Shown here: one piece after another, positions 4,324 through 64,000 of the stretch
Numbering within the stretch: the stretch's first letter is position 1
Layout of the letters: each line of letters starts with the position of its first letter
From: Octopus sinensis
Taxonomy: Eukaryota
Assembly: GCF_006345805.1 (NCBI RefSeq)
Contig: NC_042999.1
Span: forward strand, 75,330,001-75,394,000
Reading direction: 5' to 3'
Length of the DNA stretch: 64,000 bases
Notes under the pieces: generated by a model
What the model was told of the DNA's origin: nothing
Seen by the model: only the letters and a program-made list of their open reading frames with translations
Database searches by the model: none
Position numbers and translations under genes: made by a program

Positions 4324-4701
4324 CAAGGCGCGGGCAAGGCTGTGTGGTAAGAAACTTGCTTCCCAACATGATTCAGGATTCATCCCATTGCGTGGCACTT
4401 TGGGCAAGTGTCTTCTTCCATAGCCTCGGGCCGACCAAATACATATGTGTGTGTGTGTGTGTGTGTGTGTATACATATGTACGTATATATCTGTGTGTGT
4501 TTGTCCGCCCGCCATCACTTGACAACCGATGCTGGTGTATTTATGTTCCCGTAACTTAGCGGTTCGGCAAAAGTTTCCGATAGAAGTACTCGACTTACAA
4601 AGAATAAGTCCTGGGGTCGATGTTTCCGACTAAAACATTTAAGGCAGTGCTCCAGCATGGCCGCAGTCAAATGACTGAAACAAGTGAAAGAATAAAAGAA
4701 T
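4324..4701 (+). mobile_element. SINE family A, near full length with internal (TG)n
   Basis: Head ggctgtgtggtaag, ctttgggcaagtgtc; tail gtaacttagcggttcggcaaaa..gtgctccagcatggccgcagtcaaatgactgaaacaag. Confidence 0.9.
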
Positions 4702-8655: not shown

Positions 8656-10991
8656 TTGATTTTATTTATTGGCCACCAGGGCGAAGGATGAGGGGGCAAA
8701 ACAAAGCAGACATAAAGTGTGGGGGTTTACATAAACGAAATGACAAAAATACATAAACAATAAGAGTAAGTATGCACGGTATACAATGAAAAGGAAGAGA
8801 AATATACATAGAATACAAAGGTTAAAAAAGTGGATGAAGACAGAGATGTAGTCCTCCTGCTACAAAATAACCTATGGGGATAATCGAGAAACTGTCCAAG
8901 ATCTTCAATTCCCTTTCTCTGACTCACAGATCTTCACTTTGCCATTTTCGCAACTTTCACCAATCTTTCAATAAATTCATTCGCAGACAGCACTTCTCTC
9001 TTCACTCTAAATTTTCTTTTCAAGTGGAACTTGAAGTAGTCAATGAGACCTCTACGAAGGAGGGATGTATCTGTCCTCATGCCTTTCAGCCTCGTCCACC
9101 AGACAACCTCTTTCGCCACAGCCACCAGGCAAAGGAAAACTGCTTTGCCGGCCCGATTGAAGGAGGGCAGCGGTGCGATCATCACTACAGACTCGGCCGA
9201 CAGACAGATCCGTCCCACACATAACAGTAGCTGTTCAACATAACCCCATAAGTCAGCAATTCCCTGACACTGAATGAGGGTGTGCAGAACGGTTTCGTTA
9301 CGCTGCGCGCACCTGAGACAAGTCCGACTGACAGCACATCCGTGCTTGTAGAATTTATCTCGAACCGGTAGCGCCCCACTCCCGGTAGCACTGCCAGGCC
9401 AAGGACATCTGGAAATTATCCATGGTAGTTCCCGACTGGAAAGTCCTCCGGATCAGACTGGCCAGTTCGTTTTAGTCGACGCTTAGAGTTTCCTCGAGAG
9501 CGTCATTACACTTCCCCACCACTAATTCACCATAAATTGCTAAAAGCAGAACATCCACCGATCCCATTGCCCGGCTGGTAGAGGGCTGTGAGTGCCTGAC
9601 GACATTCTCGGTACCAGGCGCCCAGTCTCGGTCTTTTCTTCACTCAGGATTGCAGCTCCGTCAAGGAAACGAGCTGCGGAAAGACGTGCCTCGCAAACGG
9701 CGCCCACACATGCTCACCGTCCAGACCTAGTTGGAGTTGGCGCAACCTAAGAGGATGTCTGCGTATTAGAAGCCACAGCATACCTATCCGCCATTCAGAG
9801 GGTGCTGGCAGCAAACTGACCGTCTGATCATTGGAACGCGTCCCTTCCACAAGAAATTAGATAACAGACGCTTCAACCTGGTCAAGCAGTAACCGGGGCC
9901 AGGCACGACGGCCAGGCAATAAATGATAACGGAGGCGATGTAGTCATTCGCCACCTCTGCGCGACCTTTCAGGACAACTTCCTCTCAGCCCATTTCTGGG
10001 TAAGACTGGCCAACCTGTTCGTCACTTCCCCCCAGTTCTTACCTATCTGAAGATCCGGACCGAACGAGACACATGGCAGTTTAACTGGTCCGATGGCATC
10101 GACCTACCTCTCCAGGAGCCCAAACACAAATCCACCGATTTGTCGGCGGTGATTTTAGCCTCTGCAGCCGACGCATATTCCTCTAGAATGGTGCCGACCG
10201 TCTCCACTTCAGAGGCGTCCGACACCATGACTGTGACGTCGTGTGCGTATGCCGACACAGCCCTTCTGTGCCCCACTTCGAAAGAGATGCCCCTTAATTT
10301 TTCCAACTTCGGCAGCAGTCGTGGCTCGAACACCAATACGTACAGAAGCGGCGACAGCAGACAGCCCTAACGTACCGAGCGTACGATGCTAAACGTTTCT
10401 AATAGGTGGCCGTTTGCTTTGACTACCAAGTAGGTGCCGCTGTGCATTGCAGCGATCCAGCCTCTGAAAACGGGTCCAAAACTGTCTGGCTTCCAAGCAG
10501 TAGTAATAGTCGAGGCCTGTTCGAGATTGTGCACGTTTGCGCTTCGCCGACCAGGCTACCGACGACAAGGGCCAAACCTTTCGCTAACACCTTAGTGACT
10601 GTTATCGGCTTTTCACATAACCTCGCCTCGGCTGCTGAGATCCACAGCGGGCCGTCCAGGTTCAAACTAAAGTCCACTAGCGTCGTCGAACCATTGTCCT
10701 CCACAAGTAGTCGCGCGAAGTGCTGCTGGAAAGCCGCACACATCTGCTCGGAGCCGAGTAGTACGCGCCCGTCCCGATCCGGCAAAGACCAGATCGTGGA
10801 TTTGTTTCCACGTCAAGTCTCCACTGTTTGGGCCCGTCGGATAGCTTTCGTTCCTTCGTGTTTGAGGGCACGGACCTTAACTCTGACAACGCAGTCTTCG
10901 TGTTTCGCTTGGAAGGGCCATTTTTCGCCGCTAACAAATCAATCGCGATGTCCTTACTAATCATCTCTTCTAATTTGCTAATTCACCCTCT

Positions 10992-10992: not shown

Positions 10993-14330
<3,338 letters not shown>

Positions 14331-17295: not shown

Positions 17296-17462
17296 CATGC
17301 ACAGCGTGGCTGTGTGGTAAGACGCTTGCTTTCCAACCAGATGGTTCCGGGTTCATTCCCACTGCGTGGCACCTTAGGCAAGTATCTTCTGCTATAGCCT
17401 CGAGGCGACCAAAGCCTTGCGAGTGGATCTGGTAGACAAAAACTTAAAGAAGCCCGTCGCGC
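17296..17462 (+). mobile_element. SINE family A, 5' half
   Basis: gtggctgtgtggtaag..ggttcattccc..ccttaggcaagtatc..aaagaagcccgtc. Confidence 0.85.
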
Positions 17463-18754: not shown

Positions 18755-18761
<7 letters not shown>

Positions 18762-18975
18762 GTCTGTGTTTGTCCCCCATACCATCGTTTGACAACCGAT
18801 GTTGGTGTGTTTACGTCCCCGTAACTTAGCAGTTCGGCAAAAAAAAAACCGATTGAATAAGTACTTGGTTTACAAAGAATAAATCCTGGGGGGGGGGGTC
18901 GATGTTTTCGACTAAATGCAGTGTTCTTGCATGGCCGCACTCAAATGAATGAAACAAGTAAAAGAATAAAAGAAC
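18755..18975 (+). mobile_element. SINE family A, 3' half
   Basis: ttgacaaccgatgttggtgtgtttacgtccccgtaacttagcagttcggc. Confidence 0.85.
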
Positions 18976-19348: not shown

Positions 19349-19393
<45 letters not shown>

Positions 19394-19397
<4 letters not shown>

Positions 19398-19800
19398 GTT
19401 AATAAAATAGAACATATGCATATATATAAACATATATGTACGTACCTACCTCTACATGTACATATACACGCATATATGTGTACAGGACACCAAAAAGACG
19501 TCGAACACATAGAGAGACGAAAAACATAGACACAAACCAAGGAACAAGACAAGCAAAAAAAAGAGAGATACAGGACAATAAGCACAACGAAAAATCCCCT
19601 TCTTCAGTCGCTAAGGTTTCATCTACTAAACGTTTCGAAGGATAAAAGCGAGACGTATACTTCGAAGAAAACTTCCTTCCCGCGAAAAGCAAATCAATTA
19701 AAATTCTGAGATCTTTTCGCAGAGGGGTAAAAAAAAGCAAGACGGTAACGACAGTACAAACATATAAACAGTAAAAAATATATATATAAACAGTGGAAAA
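19394..19800 (-). mobile_element. Dispersed repeat, putative Penelope-like terminal-repeat fragment (family P1)
   Basis: Homologous to 62945-63365 (tttacccctctgcga..ccttcgaaac..ctga(a/t)gaaggggattttt..ggtgtcctgtac..gtacgtacatatatgttt). Classification is inference from hammerhead-like core words. Confidence 0.45.
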
Positions 19801-54919: not shown

Positions 54920-55616
54920 TCATGTCACATCACCAGTGATGATAGTCTTCATGAATTCTGGGTCGTTTATACAGTTCAGCATGTTTATACAGTTTATACA
55001 GTTCAGCATGTTCTGAGCGATTTCCATGCAGAGTTTCTTATGCTGCTCCTCCAACACCCTGGGGAAGAATTTCTCCGACACTCTTCTCATGCATAAATTT
55101 TCCGTTAAAATTGAAAGCACTGATCTTGTGTTTATTCCCACTTCATGAGGAATTTTCAGTTTTGTTACACAACAGTCTTCCATGACTATTCGCCGCACCT
55201 TCTAAATTGGCTCCTCGTTCCGGTTTGTGGATGGCCTACCTGAGCGTGCCTCGCTCTCTACAGTGGTGCAGCCATGTTTGAACGGGATTGTACCACTCCT
55301 TGATCTGTGTTTTGCCCATGATATCATCATCTTCTGGATGACTTGAACATGAGAATCATCAAGCGTTTTTGTAAAACTTGATGCAATATCTCTGCTTGCT
55401 TTGTTCGGTCATCTTGAGTCAAAACGAAAACCCGACGTGTGCGTACAACACGTCTTTAGGCATAACATCCAGAAACTGATTCCGCCTACTTTTGCGAAAA
55501 TTTTATCGCATGTACAGGAGGGGTGGCGTCACCTCCTAACCAAAGGATTTTGCTCATGTGGCATTAGTTTCGGCGGGAAAAATAAAGTAGGATACTTTTT
55601 GAACGCACCTCGTATA
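54920..55616 (-). mobile_element. mariner-family transposon, 5' portion only
   Basis: End tacgaggtgcgttcaaaaagtatcc. ATG at 55412: MTEQSKQRYCIKF...GKTQIKEWY..SEARSGRPST..MRRVSEKFFPRVL..DPEFMKTIITGD, then truncated. Confidence 0.85.
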
Positions 55617-58869: not shown

Positions 58870-59100
58870 GTGTGCGTGTATCTTTGTGTCTGTGTTTGTC
58901 GGCCCCACCATCGCTTGACAACCAATGGTGGTATGTTTATGTTCCTGTAACTTGGCTGTTCGGCCAAATAGACCGATAGAATAAGTACTAGATTAACAAG
59001 GAATAAGTCCTGGGGTCGATTTCTACGACTAAAACTCCCTAAGATTGTGCTCCAGCATGGCCACAATAAAATGACTGAAGCGCATAAAAGAATTAAGGAA
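58870..59100 (+). mobile_element. SINE family A, 3' half
   Basis: catcgcttgacaaccaatggtgg..aataagtcctggggtcgat..ctccagcatggcc. Confidence 0.85.
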
Positions 59101-59447: not shown

Positions 59448-61013
59448 TAGAACCACGCTAATAGCTTAGGAGGGAAATGTAGGATTCCTCGGTTTTGTAT
59501 GATTCGATTTTGATAAAACGTTTCCAAGATGGTTTGCATACTATGGCAACATCATTGTTATGTTTCTATTATTCAGGGTAACGTCCTTTCTTTTTTATTA
59601 TTTCAGATTCTTTTTTTTTTTTCCTTTTTTTTGTGAACCACGCTAATCGCTTTCGGATGAAATTACCCCATCTAGACGTGTTTTTTTTTCTTTTTTCAGA
59701 AAATGACGGGTGATGATACATATTAAGCATACATGGAGTAATATATTTAAAAGAAAACCATAATAATTATAACATTTATTGACATAATGAATTATTTCGC
59801 CACATGAACGCCATTTCAACGGATAACTTTAAAAATCCTATTAGTCAGGGAATCTGTCAATTTCTTAATAGTAGCAAACTGGTCTGCCTCTGCTGCAGCT
59901 TTGATGGTCACCCATAAGACATGTTTCGACGTAAATTGTTGTCCATCGGTATAAACATCTTGTTCAATGATGGACCAAGTATTTTCGATAAGATTGAGAT
60001 CCGGAGATGCTGGCGGCCACACCATCAACCTTTCACCTTTTATGCTGTAAGACCCTTGTAATGTTTGGGTGTTCCTAGCAAAGTGAGAGGAGACGTTGTC
60101 ATGCATGGATACGAGATTACTTAGAAGTGACAGTAGTATATGATCTAGCCAGGGATCCAAGATCTCCTTCAGGAGATTGCAGTAGGCGGCTGCAGTCACT
60201 TTAACCCCTTCAGGCACCGCAACTGGGCCAATAAGTCTGCCCCCAATGATACCAGCCCACAACATGACTCCCCCACCCTGTTGCTGACGTCGTAAACGTT
60301 GGTGAAGCTCATCTCCAAAATAGACCCAAACTTTTGCCCAACCGTCAGCTCCGTCGAGGGTCGCCCTGGTTCCGTAAGTGAACAAAACACAACTCATGTC
60401 TAACGTCATGTACTTTTGGATCCATTGAAGTCTCAAACTCCTGCGTCGGAGTGTTAAAGGATGCAGTTTCAGGGGTTCTCGCACAGAAGCCATGGTCTCG
60501 AGAATGCAATTTCTGGTGGTTTTCAGAACATGAAGAAGTCCAGAGGCTGTGAAAATGGTTTGCTTCTTTGTCCAGATTTCTCACGTAACTTGCAGCCAAT
60601 ATTCTTTAAATCCCTAGCTGTCCCAGTCTTGAAGGTCCCACAATCGGATCATTTCTTCTTCGGTGAAGGGTCCTTCAGAAATCGTTTAACCGTGTCCTCA
60701 TGACGACCTAACTTTTCCGCAATGACATGAAGAGAGATATCTTTAGCACTTTCCTTGATAATGACAGAATTTTCTTCAACGTAAAGGCTTTTTCCACGTC
60801 CCTTGTTCTTCGAGAGGAGAGACGCTATTAGCGTGGTTCACCCCAAAACTGAAAAATCTGAAATAAAAAAGAAAGGACGTTACACAGAGTAATGAAAACA
60901 CAACAATGGTGTTGCCATAGTGTGCAAACCAGCTGGGAAACTTTTTATCAAAATCGATTCACAGAAAACCAAGAAATCCCAAATTTCACCCCTAAGCTAT
61001 TAGCGTGGCTCTG
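59448..61013 (-). mobile_element. Tc1-like DD37E (TRT-type) DNA transposon, full length, inactivated
   Basis: ~200-bp imperfect TIRs (59448-59650, 60824-61013). Decayed transposase ~60804 to 59792 with RATLDGADGW, QQQGGGVMLWAGII, HDN...PDLNLIEN. 37 residues between D (60098-60100) and E (59984-59986). First D changed (FTYG), start codon lost, stops and frameshifts. Confidence 0.92.
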
Positions 61014-61182
61014 GGTGTATATGTATGTGTGTGTGTGTGTGTGTGTGTATGCATGTATGCACACACATACACACTTATGCACACATACATATGTTTATAT
61101 AGCCCTTTCCTCTTATATTTTGTTGAGCAGTCGTTCTATTGTCACTGAAGTTTGAATGAAAGGAAAGACGTTACGTTCTTAC

Positions 61183-61262
61183 TATGATTTGGCCACTACA
61201 TCTGCGAGGTAAGAGCATCTCTGCAGCACGCATCTTCATTTCAAAACACATCTTGAAAAATG
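61183..61262 (-). CDS. Candidate exon (80 nt) of minus-strand host gene
   Basis: Strong acceptor tttttcttctttctctag, donor TA|GTAAGA. Single open frame FFKMCFEMKMRAAEMLLPRRCSGQII (phase 1 to 0). Confidence 0.4.
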
Positions 61263-61857
61263 CTAGAGAAAGAAGAAAAAGCATTGCTGATAAAGTAATC
61301 AATCCGATAAAAAGAAAGTCTTTCAACAATTAATAACCAGGCTGAATTAAAGGATTTTCAATGGATGCTCAGAAAATTATGAAGCACAATACTTGACCTA
61401 ATATCTCCTTCAGACTGCCATTCAAATCTGACAGTTTGAATAAAATACATAGTCTAAAATTTATATCCCTTTACATACGTGGTATTTTGAAAACCACACG
61501 CAAGGATTCAACATGTCAGTGAAATAAAGACGAATTTATGTTTTGAGATAAATAGTGTGACCATGAAGTTCTGGCGATCTCAAGAGCTAGCCTTCTATAT
61601 ATCTGCATTGATTTGTTAACGTACAATTGTACTGTACAATGTGTAGCGTGCATATTGGTGCAGACATGTAAAATACTTTATTATACACTGAAATTATAAC
61701 ATGATGAAGGCTATGGAACGGCTATAAAGTAGTTAAATAATCATATTTATTCTCTCATACCTCCTGACTTTTATGGTTTATATACACCTCATCCAAAAAG
61801 TTCATCAATTGAATGTACATACACACACACACATACATACACACACATATATGTATA

Positions 61858-62010
61858 CAGGCGCAAGCGAGGCTGTGTCGTAGTAGATTGCTTTCCAACC
61901 ACATGCTTCTGGATTCAGTTCCAGAGTGGCACCTTGAGCAAGTGTCTTTTACTATAGCCTCGGCCCGACCAAAGCCTTGTATTTGGTAGAGGGAAACTGA
62001 AAGAAGCCCA
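61858..62010 (+). mobile_element. SINE family A, 5' half
   Basis: caggcgcaagcgaggctgtg..ggattcagttcc..ccttgagcaagtgtc..gaaactgaaagaagccc. Confidence 0.85.
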
Positions 62011-62193
62011 GACTCACACGCATACCTCAACTTCTCCTCCTCCCACCCTAAACACACCAAGCTTTCCATCCCCTATTCCCAATTTCCCCGTCTACGCAGG
62101 CTCTGTAGTGACGACCTTGACTTTGGGATTCAGTCTCAACTCATGGCTCATCCTACGTGTATGTATGTATATATATATGTATATATATATAAT

Positions 62194-62258
<65 letters not shown>

Positions 62259-62303
62259 GTATTATATGTATATATATATATATATGTATATATATATGTA
62301 TAT

Positions 62304-62364
<61 letters not shown>

Positions 62365-62369
62365 ATTAT

Positions 62370-62438
<69 letters not shown>

Positions 62439-62443
<5 letters not shown>

Positions 62444-62943
62444 TAGTGGTACAACAAAGCACCAATATTCACTGAAAATAGCAGTCGATACAATTACGAC
62501 GCTATAATAAATCTTCAATGCGTATATACTGACAAAGACGTGTGAGTGCAACAAACATGAATAATTTGTCTTACCTCTTGGAAGAACATTCGATAACTGG
62601 ACAGCCCAGAATCGGATAAGTCTTCATCAGCTGCATTTCCCTAGACAATGTTTCAAATGTTGCTACATCAACGCCAGTGTACTCGCGTGAACGCTTAGCT
62701 GTTAACAGAACGAGAACAGTGAAAAAGTTTTCAATGAAAAATAAAATATTGCAAACAGATGTATTACTTTGCAGTAAAATAAAGCACCGTAAAGGTAGAA
62801 GTATAAATATAGATTATTATAGCGTCGTAATTGTATCGACTGCTATTTCCAGTGAATATTGGTGCCTTGTTGTACCACTAATCTATATTTGTATTTATAC
62901 TTCTACCTTTATTTTACTGGAAAGTAATACATTTGTATTGCAT
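62439..62943. repeat. Two interlocked inverted repeats around the 62575-62698 exon
   Basis: 62439-62510 is the reverse complement of 62814-62885 (72 bp, 2 mismatches). 62751-62814 is the approximate reverse complement of 62881-62943, with indels. Confidence 0.9.
62575..62698 (-). CDS. Candidate internal coding exon (124 nt) of an unidentified host gene
   Basis: Minus strand: acceptor ttctcgttctgttaacag, donor AG|GTAAGA. Only one frame is open across the whole exon: KRSREYTGVDVATFETLSREMQLMKTYPILGCPVIECSSK (phase 1 to 2). Non-repetitive island among repeats. No homologue recognised. Confidence 0.5.
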
Positions 62944-62944
62944 C

Positions 62945-63365
62945 TATTGTTACGTCCCGTTTGTGTTACATTTTTTTCGTGCTTGTTTTACCCCTCTGCG
63001 AGGTTATTTTATTTTAATTCTCTCGCAGGAAGGCTTAGTATTGACGAGTCGTGTCCTGTCTTGCCTTCGAAACACGCTAAGTCTACTAGTGACAGCTGAT
63101 GAAGGGGATTTTTCCTTGTGTAGCATGTCATGTACCTCGTTTTTCTGTTGTAAATAATGTTTTTCCCGTTTTCGTTCTCGTCCTGTTCTACGTCTCTGTC
63201 TTTCTGTTGTAACAAAATGGCTTTTCCGTTTTCGTTTCTGTTGAGTTTTACGTCTTTTTGTGGTGTCCTGTACGTATATATATATTTATATATGCATGTA
63301 TATATACATGTAGATGTCGGTACGTACATATATGTTTGTATGTATGCATATATTTTATTTATTAC
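62945..63365 (+). mobile_element. Dispersed repeat, family P1, second copy
   Basis: See 19394-19800. Confidence 0.45.
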
Positions 63366-63381
63366 ACTATATATTTATATA

Positions 63382-63456
63382 TGCGCAGGAATGGCTGTGT
63401 GGTAAGTAACATGCTTACTGAAAGAAACTGAAAGAAGCCCGTCGTATATATGTATG

Positions 63457-63539
<83 letters not shown>

Positions 63540-63775
63540 TATATATGTGTGTGTATGCGTGTGTATACGTTTGTGTGTCTGTGTTTGTCCCCCAACATCA
63601 CTTGATAACCGATGCTGGTGTGTTTACGTCACCGTAACTTAGCGGTTCGACCAAAATAACCGATAGAATAAGTACTAGGCTTACAAAGAATAAGTCCTGG
63701 GGTCGATTTGCTCGACTAAAGACGGTGCTTCAGCATGGCCACAGTCAAATGACTGAAACAACTAAAAGAGTTAAA
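63382..63775 (+). mobile_element. SINE family A, with deletion in head and long internal (TA)n
   Basis: gcgcaggaatggctgtgtggtaag joined directly to gaaactgaaagaagcccgtc; intact 3' half. Confidence 0.88.
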
Positions 63776-64000
63776 ATATATATATATATACTGCGTGAAA
63801 GAAGTGACTCTTGATAAAGGCGCGAATGTTTCAAGGGTTTTTATTTCGGTAGTTAGGGGATATTCTTGATTCTGAAGCCTAATTAAGAAATCATTAATGG
63901 CTTGACGTTTATTTTTGATCTTACATTCACTGGCCGTACATCTATGTGACATTTATTTTTCTACTTTCTTCTTGGTTCTCTTTATATGTTTCTTATGCTT

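What the first reader, a model, noticed from the sequence alone, without database searches (positions are those of the whole stretch)
62439..62943. Exon caged by a 72-bp inverted repeat, with a competing second hairpin (possible RNA-structure splicing switch or circRNA locus)
Seen: 62439-62510 and 62814-62885 are reverse complements with two mismatches and flank the candidate exon 62575-62698 at 64 and 115 nt. On the minus-strand (host sense) RNA both mismatches are G-U wobbles, so the duplex is fully paired; on the plus strand they would be A-C. A second inverted pair (62751-62814 with 62881-62943) encloses one arm of the first, so the two folds would form a pseudoknot and are probably mutually exclusive. 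Junctions share atcta/tagat microhomology. Established: flanking intronic inverted repeats promote exon skipping and back-splicing and are ADAR substrates; A-to-I editing is extensive in coleoid cephalopods. Inference: a recent template-switch event or TE-end inversion created a structure that could toggle inclusion or circularisation of this exon.
Basis: partly seen in the sequence, partly recalled or inferred. Interest (0 to 1): 0.72.

Follow-up and report, generated by a model that had tools for sequence, protein, structure and literature searches.

The report
Interleaved inverted duplication in repeat-rich DNA
The two inverted repeats are real and far beyond chance, but they look like a local DNA-copying accident in repeat-rich non-coding sequence, and nothing I could test shows that the piece they enclose is an exon or that they control splicing.

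Summary
Arms 62439-62510 and 62814-62885 are reverse complements, 72 nt with 2 mismatches. A second, more decayed pair (62751-62814 and 62881-62943) encloses the right arm, giving the interleaved order a-X-b-a'-b'. Both pairs far exceed chance. The a/a' duplex dominates the predicted fold on either strand.

- The 124-nt "exon" has consensus splice sites and an open frame, but composition-matched shuffles give about 1.2 such candidates per window.
- Its peptide has no real homologue in two very large protein searches and no Pfam match.
- No other unique minus-strand open segment in the window matches any protein, so I found no host gene.
- The "G-U on the host strand" argument fails: b/b' pairs better on the plus strand.

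Origin is the best-supported part. a'b' is one contiguous 130-nt piece, the reverse complement of a then b. Microhomology sits at both internal junctions: AGAT, then ATCTAT. Interleaving cannot come from nested transposon insertions. No other copy lies in the 64 kb, although real repeat families there recur. I read it as a templated insertion made by two successive snap-back or template-switch steps. This is ordinary. RNA-seq and other genomes, which I could not reach, would settle it.

The parts
62160..62443 (.). Compound microsatellite, (TA)n with interruptions and then about 19 units of (GATA)n, abutting the left arm. Its last unit supplies the TAGAT at the start of arm a.
   Evidence: Read directly; direct-repeat families D1-D5.
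62439..62510 (.). Arm a, the left arm of the 72-nt inverted repeat. Inferred to be the template copy.
   Evidence: 72 nt, 2 mismatches against rc of 62814-62885; 97.3% over 73 nt.
62511..62574 (.). Spacer between arm a and the exon-like segment. Its first bases, ATCT (62511-62514), are the inferred landing microhomology for the first switch.
   Evidence: junction print-out.
62575..62698 (-). Exon-like segment of 124 nt on the minus strand. It has a CAG acceptor after 15/20 pyrimidines, a GAG|GTAAGA donor, 40 open codons and GC 0.45. Its status as an exon is unproven.
   Evidence: pattern at chance level; no real homologue.
62699..62750 (.). AT-rich spacer (GC about 0.28 over 62699-813) between the exon-like segment and arm b.
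62751..62814 (.). Arm b, the left arm of the second inverted pair. Inferred to be the template copy. It ends in ...ATATAGAT.
62814..62885 (.). Arm a', the reverse complement of a. Inferred to be the first templated segment of the insertion.
62881..62943 (.). Arm b', the reverse complement of b. It overlaps a' by ATCTA. Inferred to be the second templated segment. Relative to b it has a 10-nt deletion between TAAAG repeats, a 6-nt insertion and a 1-nt indel.
62944..62976 (.). Short unique stretch where homology to b's flank stops. Inferred return point to the original template.
   Evidence: (no significant similarity of a'b'Z to the 19-kb copy of the neighbouring repeat).
62977..63385 (+). Neighbouring dispersed repeat (context only, not part of the structure). 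A second, inverted copy lies at about 19383-19742.
63386..63775 (+). SINE-like element with an internal (TA)n expansion (context only). The window holds three further full-length copies of its 3' part and one partial.
   Evidence: 17-mer shared with the SINE head at 61862-62009 (family D9).

Best explanation
This is a locus-specific, fairly young inverted duplication in repeat-rich, apparently non-coding DNA. It is not a regulatory device.

**Inferred history**
- The ancestral sequence read (GATA)n - a - X - b - Z.
- During replication or break repair, a nascent 3' end finishing in ...TAGAT (the end of b, 62814) came off its template.
- It snapped back onto ATCT just 3' of a (62511-62514) and copied a backwards, making a'. 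It ran a few bases into the GATA repeat, giving ...ATCTAT.
- It came off again and re-paired through ATCTAT/ATAGAT with the end of b. It copied b backwards, making b', with a' now sitting in the loop.
- It then rejoined the original template at 62944.
- The product is a single 129-130-nt templated insertion, a'b'. This explains why the two inverted pairs are interleaved.
- Later change was about 2 substitutions in each arm pair, plus slippage indels in the AT-rich b'.

**Consequence, if the region is transcribed on either strand.** The RNA would carry a 72-bp near-perfect duplex, with a weaker alternative b/b' hairpin. It would be an obvious double-stranded RNA editing or dicing substrate. I think the most likely functional state is none.

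**Shown:** the repeats, their topology, the junction microhomologies, the absence of other copies in the window, and the absence of coding evidence.
**Inferred:** the direction and mechanism of the event, and its neutrality.
For: - The arms and their interleaved order a-X-b-a'-b' are confirmed.
- A predicted insert, rc(a)+rc(b), matches the observed 62814-943 at 118 of 134 alignment columns. Most differences lie in the two slippage-prone indel regions of b'.
- Junction 1: the observed ...ATATAGAT|TATTATAGCG compares with the rc of a's 3' flank, ...GAAGATTTATTATAGCG, sharing AGAT(T).
- Junction 2: the a' end ...CCACTAATCTA|TATTT compares with rc of (GATA)n+a...AATCTATCTATC, and with rc of b's end, ATCTATATTTATAC, sharing ATCTAT.
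- Substitution divergence is similar in the two pairs: 2/72 for a/a' and about 2/58 for b/b'. That fits a single event.
- There is no further copy of a, b or X in the 64 kb. The SINE parts recur 3-4 times and the neighbouring repeat twice.
- No coding or RNA-family signal lies in the block.
- Template switching is documented as a source of reverse-complement repeats and perfect hairpins (PMC5453318, PMC8794818).
Against: - No outgroup or second allele was available, so I cannot show that a'b' is the derived state, or which copy came first.
- Genome-wide copy number is unknown. A low-copy transposon family would look single-copy in 64 kb.
- 130 nt over two segments is larger than the short events treated in PMC5453318, whose model explicitly leaves out multiple successive switches.
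- The microhomologies lie in GATA-like low-complexity sequence, where short matches are easy to find.
- b/b' carries three indels and a/a' only one at its edge, so different ages are not excluded.
- The exon-like segment is GC-richer (0.45) than its flanks (0.28-0.34), which I have not explained.
Confidence: 0.55

Rival explanations
1. 62575-62698 is a real minus-strand exon. The a/a' duplex loops it out, promoting skipping or back-splicing into a 124-nt circle. The b'/b hairpin is transcribed first and competes with a/a', giving a switch that double-stranded RNA editing could tune.
For: - The splice signals are good: CAG after 15/20 pyrimidines, GAG|GTAAGA, 40 open codons and raised GC. Under strict criteria it is the only such candidate on either strand of the real window.
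- The arms lie 64 and 115 nt from the sites, and the duplex is very strong at -121.7 kcal/mol.
- On the minus-strand RNA, b'-a'-b is made before a and folds on its own at -77.8 kcal/mol.
Against: - The same criteria give 1.2 candidates per shuffled window, so the pattern is at chance level, and the criteria were fitted to this candidate.
- There is no homologue. No minus-strand coding segment anywhere in the window matches a protein.
- There is no strand-consistent pairing signature.
- The exon is not a multiple of three. From my own knowledge, not tested here, 124 nt is short for a single-exon circle.
- circRNAs are reported at overall low levels in octopus (PMC9699675).
Confidence: 0.05
2. 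A non-autonomous DNA transposon (MITE or foldback-type element) whose long terminal inverted repeats are a and a', possibly flanked by TA. The b/b' pair would come from a later rearrangement or from subterminal repeats.
For: - The a-X-a' unit is about 447 bp with 72-nt terminal inverted repeats, which is MITE-sized.
- TA flanks both ends: TA|GATTAGTGG...CCACTAATC|TA.
- The window is full of mobile elements, including a Tc1-like transposase remnant 2 kb away and SINEs on both sides.
Against: - The TA is part of the palindrome itself, so it is not evidence of a target duplication, and no other duplication is seen.
- b' lies outside the supposed element but mirrors b inside it. An insertion cannot produce that.
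- There is no other copy in 64 kb and no similarity to the nearby Tc1-like element.
- No transposase-like coding remnant is present.
Confidence: 0.2
3. A hairpin locus that yields small RNAs (endogenous siRNAs, or a nascent microRNA-like gene) from the long duplex, born by template switching.
For: - The duplex is very stable and near perfect on both strands.
- Template switching has been proposed as a source of new hairpin RNA genes (PMC8794818; bioRxiv 10.1101/2023.04.19.537475, title and abstract only).
Against: - There is no evidence of transcription.
- No Rfam family matches inside the block, even at E <= 1.
- The loops of 303 and 72 nt are far from microRNA geometry.
Confidence: 0.05
4. 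An assembly or sequencing artefact, such as a chimeric fold-back read.
For: Inverted duplications next to long microsatellites are a known trouble spot for assemblers. This rests on my own knowledge and was not tested here.
Against: - The copies differ by substitutions and by indels of slippage type. That points to evolutionary divergence rather than a read folded on itself.
- The arms are short and interleaved, unlike kilobase-scale fold-back chimeras.
Confidence: 0.03

Closest known systems
Template-switch mutations and serial templated insertions (quasipalindrome or snap-back synthesis, FoSTeS/MMBIR; four-point model of PMC5453318; hairpin creation in PMC8794818)
   Same: A segment is the reverse complement of sequence a few hundred bases away. 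Short microhomology sits at the switch points. The result is a ready-made near-perfect hairpin.
   Different: Two successive switches give an interleaved pair of repeats, and the insert is about 130 nt. The published genome-wide model treats single, mostly short, switch-and-return events and leaves multiple rounds aside. The ancestral state is not available here.
Exons flanked by complementary intronic repeats that drive back-splicing or skipping (Alu-pair type circRNA loci; Ivanov et al. 2015, as cited in PMC9699675)
   Same: Long reverse-complementary sequences lie within about 100 nt of candidate splice sites on both sides, and a competing pairing partner is present.
   Different: The exon, the host gene and any transcription are unproven. 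The complementary arms are a local duplication rather than two copies of a dispersed repeat.
MITEs and foldback transposons
   Same: A few hundred bases bounded by long terminal inverted repeats, in transposon-rich DNA.
   Different: There is no convincing target-site duplication, no second copy in the window, and one arm of the second repeat lies outside the would-be element.

Membership tests
Template-switch or templated-insertion product | The inserted segment is the reverse complement of nearby sequence | tested here: met
   a' = rc(a) at 70/72. b' = rc(b) with 2 substitutions and 3 indels. The sources lie 304 and 0 nt away.
Template-switch or templated-insertion product | Microhomology at the switch points | tested here: met
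   AGAT(T) at b->a' and ATCTAT at a'->b'. Caveat: the context is GATA-like and low in complexity.
Template-switch or templated-insertion product | Ancestral or outgroup allele lacks the insert | not testable with these tools
   No related genome was reachable. Exact look-ups of window ORFs were not on record and DNA scans of the public collections were empty.
Template-switch or templated-insertion product | Locus-specific, not a dispersed family | tested here: inconclusive
   There is no other copy in the 64-kb window, while the true repeat families recur. The genome-wide count is not available.
Repeat-flanked circRNA or skipped exon | A genuine spliced exon within a transcribed gene | tested here: inconclusive
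   Consensus sites and an open frame are present but at chance frequency. There is no homologue and no sign of a host gene. No RNA data are available.
Repeat-flanked circRNA or skipped exon | Reverse-complementary sequences in both flanks able to pair | tested here: met
   A 72-bp duplex at -121.7 kcal/mol on the minus-strand RNA, which dominates the minimum-energy fold.
Repeat-flanked circRNA or skipped exon | Back-splice or skipping junction reads | not testable with these tools
MITE or TIR DNA transposon | Terminal inverted repeats | tested here: met
   a/a', 72 nt.
MITE or TIR DNA transposon | Target-site duplication | tested here: inconclusive
   Only a TA that is itself part of the palindrome. 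The 8 bp outside TAGTGG...CCACTA are inverted, not direct.
MITE or TIR DNA transposon | Multiple dispersed copies | tested here: not met
   None in the window. This covers the window only; the rest of the genome is untested.
C2H2 zinc-finger coding exon | Cys and His zinc ligands in register | tested here: not met
   Only the linker-like T-x-P-[IV]-L-x-C-x4-C stretch matches repeats of springtail protein P0001. The preceding Cys-Cys and His-His positions are G, V, E and Y in the window peptide. There is no Pfam zinc-finger hit.

The most novel reading that the evidence does not exclude
The 124-nt segment is a genuine, lineage-specific and still unannotated exon. A recent template-switch event placed it between two mutually exclusive hairpins. 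The first-transcribed b'/b fold and the stronger a'/a fold, together with double-stranded RNA editing of the arms, would then set its inclusion, skipping or circularisation. That would be a splicing switch caught shortly after its birth.
Probability: 0.04. Interest if true: 0.6.

Novelty: new member of a known kind. Interest (0 to 1): 0.2.

Why it matters
As it stands it matters little. It is a clean, well-preserved example of how two successive template switches can create a 72-bp hairpin and a competing second hairpin in one step. That is useful as an illustration of how long RNA or DNA stems arise without selection. It would become interesting only if transcriptome data showed that the enclosed segment is spliced. 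In that case the locus would show a mutational accident creating structure-dependent splicing control in an animal with very active RNA editing.

Tried and rejected
1. **Homology of the exon peptide.** The word-index search found nothing. The exhaustive HMMER search found two marginal hits. The springtail C2H2 hit is a repeated linker motif summed over many repeats and lacks the zinc ligands, so I reject it as evidence of coding. Pfam found nothing.
2. **Related DNA through spurious ORFs.** The 159-codon plus-strand frame across b, a' and b' had no hits. Exact look-ups of three window ORFs were not on record.
3. **Search for a host gene.** Forty unique minus-strand open segments joined with X had no hit.
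4. **DNA pattern scans.** A 24-mer from the arm in metagenome and viral contigs, and a 24-mer from the exon in metagenome contigs, gave 0 matches. These collections are not expected to hold this animal's DNA.
5. **Known RNA families.** Rfam at E <= 1 over 61000-64000 gave only sub-threshold microsatellite look-alikes outside the block. There are no tRNAs.
6. **Whether b' belongs to the neighbouring dispersed repeat**, which would reverse the polarity of the model. The alignment score of 18 sits within the shuffle mean of 19, so I rejected this.
7. **Whether a lost copy of b lies upstream of the microsatellite.** None was found.
8. **Strand-specific G.U as a sign of selection.** Rejected.

Full report
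**Observation**

The region was read directly and the repeats were recomputed.
- blastn of the block against the window gives 97.3% over 73 nt for this pair.
- The repeat finder stretches the pair to 95 nt at 89% (pair I5). The extra 23 nt are only (GATA)n facing a GATA-like stretch.
- The second pair, 62751-62814 with 62881-62943, is real but more decayed. Its most parsimonious alignment has two substitutions, a 15-nt exact core, and indels of 1, 10 and 6 nt. The 10-nt indel lies between TAAAG repeats.
- The distances of 64 and 115 nt to the candidate exon, and the TAGAT/ATCTA junction motifs, are as stated.
- In 100 dinucleotide shuffles of 62436-63280, the best inverted self-match reached 41 bits. 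The observed values are 123-127 and 76 bits.
- Folding 62420-62960 as RNA gives -199.3 kcal/mol on the minus strand (z = -14.1) and -195.1 on the plus strand (z = -15.1). The a/a' helix is the backbone of both.

**Anatomy and surroundings**

The order is a (62439-62510), X (62511-62750), b (62751-62814), a' (62814-62885), b' (62881-62943).
- The two pairs are interleaved, not nested.
- a' and b' form one contiguous 130-nt piece that equals rc(a) followed by rc(b).
- To the left lies a compound (TA)n/(GATA)n microsatellite, 62160-62443. Its last unit supplies the TAGAT that opens arm a.
- To the right, after 33 unique bases, lies a dispersed repeat (62977-63385) with an inverted second copy near 19.4-19.7 kb. 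A SINE-like element follows at 63386-63775.
- A SINE head sits at 61862-62009. A Tc1-like transposase remnant lies at 59819-60837 on the minus strand (DDE_3, HTH_Tnp_Tc3_1).
- The window as a whole is rich in transposons and microsatellites.
- Within the 64 kb, a, b and X have no other copy. The SINE parts recur three to four times and the neighbouring repeat twice.

**Is the enclosed segment an exon?**

For it:
- On the minus strand it has a CAG acceptor after 15 of 20 pyrimidines, a GAG|GTAAGA donor, 40 open codons and GC 0.45 against 0.28-0.34 in the flanks.
- With these criteria it is the only candidate on either strand of the real window.

Against it:
- The criteria were fitted to this candidate. 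Windows shuffled in 500-nt blocks give 1.22 such candidates on average, and 70% have at least one. The pattern is what chance supplies.
- Open frames are cheap here. The plus-strand frame across the same DNA is open for 159 codons.
- The peptide shares no three 5-residue words with any of 5.8 billion cluster representatives.
- In an exhaustive HMMER scan of 1.84 billion representatives it has only two marginal hits.
- The better hit (E = 6.8e-5) is a springtail C2H2 protein. The score is summed over many copies of a linker-like motif, T-x-P-[IV]-L-x-C-x4-C. The zinc ligands of the preceding finger are not present in the window peptide.
- That hit does show that eukaryotic proteomes are in the library. 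The silence is therefore informative, although I could not confirm that this species' annotation is included.
- Pfam gives nothing.
- I joined the 40 unique, non-repetitive minus-strand open segments of at least 38 codons from the whole window into one 2486-aa query. None of 2622 word-sharing candidates scored.

I therefore have no evidence for a host gene on the "host sense" strand. Short exons and unannotated genes remain possible.

**The strand argument**

Any transition in a perfect stem gives G.U on one strand and A.C on the other. Two of two on the same strand is about a one-in-four outcome.
- In b/b' the clear transition (62758 G / 62933 T) is a wobble on the plus strand.
- The duplex energies disagree in direction. 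a/a' is -121.7 on the minus strand and -113.8 on the plus. b/b' is -52.2 on the minus and -64.5 on the plus.

There is no sign of selection for pairing in a minus-strand RNA.

**Competition between the folds**

If the left arm is kept unpaired, the b'/b hairpin forms. The RNA as it would exist before the exon-like segment and arm a are transcribed (62960 down to 62700) folds to -77.8 kcal/mol, with a' in the loop. On a minus-strand transcript the weaker helix would indeed form first. This remains hypothetical without transcription.

**Origin**

The junctions were printed side by side.
- At b->a', the observed ...ATATAGAT|TATTATAGCG compares with the reverse complement of a's 3' flank, ...GAAGATTTATTATAGCG. 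They share AGAT(T).
- At a'->b', ...CCACTAATCTA|TATTTG compares with the reverse complement of (GATA)n+a, ...AATCTATCTATC, and with the reverse complement of b's end, ATCTATATTTATAC. They share ATCTAT.
- At b'->Z, homology to b's flank stops after TTGCA.
- A predicted insert, rc(a)+rc(b), matches the observed 62814-62943 at 118 of 134 columns. Most differences lie in the two indel regions.

The simplest history is one event with two snap-back steps:
1. A 3' end finishing at the end of b pairs with ATCT just beyond a and copies a backwards into the first GATA unit.
2. It re-pairs through ATCTAT with the end of b and copies b backwards.
3. It rejoins at 62944.

This explains four things:
- the contiguity of a'b';
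- the interleaving, which nested transposon insertions cannot give;
- the microhomologies;
- the similar substitution divergence of the two pairs (2/72 and about 2/58).

It belongs to the known family of template-switch or templated-insertion mutations (PMC5453318, PMC8794818). It is larger than most, and it is a two-step case of the kind the four-point model leaves aside.

The caveats are real:
- there is no outgroup;
- the junctions sit in a low-complexity context;
- the genome-wide copy number is unknown.

A MITE-like element is the main rival. The a...a' unit is MITE-sized and TA sits at both ends. But that TA is part of the palindrome, and b' outside the unit mirroring b inside it is not what an insertion produces.

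**Comparison and verdict**

- As a structure it works like the repeat-flanked exons that circularise or are skipped in other animals. Membership fails on the defining point, a demonstrated spliced exon in a transcribed gene, which is inconclusive at best.
- circRNAs are reported at overall low levels in octopus (PMC9699675).
- As a mutation it is a new example of a known kind.
- That this is an octopus genome is my recollection of the SINE sequence, not a tested result.

Scores:
- interest: 0.2;
- the most novel reading still open is a newborn structure-controlled exon, at a probability of about 0.04.

Noticed in passing
window 59819-60837 (-): Tc1/mariner-type transposase remnant. An open segment of 254 codons matches DDE_3 (E = 2.3e-7). 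An upstream 62-codon segment matches the Tc3 transposase HTH (E = 1.3e-6). They lie in different frames, so the gene is broken.
   Followed up: partly
window 11385-13921 (+) and 8937-10960 (-): A LINE-type retrotransposon with a reverse-transcriptase domain (RVT_1, E = 3e-23, at 12235-12858). An older, inverted and decayed copy next to it carries the zf-RVT domain at 8937-9452. A long (GATA/TATC)-type microsatellite at about 10.95-11.3 kb lies between them.
   Followed up: partly
window 62977-63385 (+) and about 19383-19742 (-): An unclassified dispersed repeat, about 76-78% identical between the two copies. It contains the motifs TTTTACCCCTCTGCGA and GAAGGGGATTTTTC. Its left edge lies about 33 nt from the end of arm b'.
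   Followed up: partly
window 63386-63775 (+); other copies at 4492-4697, 18759-18971, 58885-59096; heads at 61862-62009, 2577-2709, 17303-17455, 4334-4439: An abundant SINE-like family, 77-81% identical between copies. The copy at 63386 has an internal deletion in its head and a (TA)n expansion inside it.
   Followed up: partly
window 62575-62698 (-), peptide residues 16-40: The exon-like frame reads ...TYPILGCPVIECSSK. This resembles the linker plus the first two cysteines of a C-x4-C zinc finger repeated in a springtail protein (P0001). The remaining ligands are missing. It is either chance or a very decayed finger.
   Followed up: yes
window 54923-55408 (-): Two adjacent open segments read like the N-terminal DNA-binding part of a mariner-type transposase. 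That is by eye only; Pfam gave no significant match.
   Followed up: no
window 61012-61095 and other microsatellite tracts: (CA/TG)n and (TA)n tracts give sub-threshold Rfam matches to several microRNA families (mir-297, mir-466 and others), all well below the gathering scores. These are low-complexity artefacts.
   Followed up: yes
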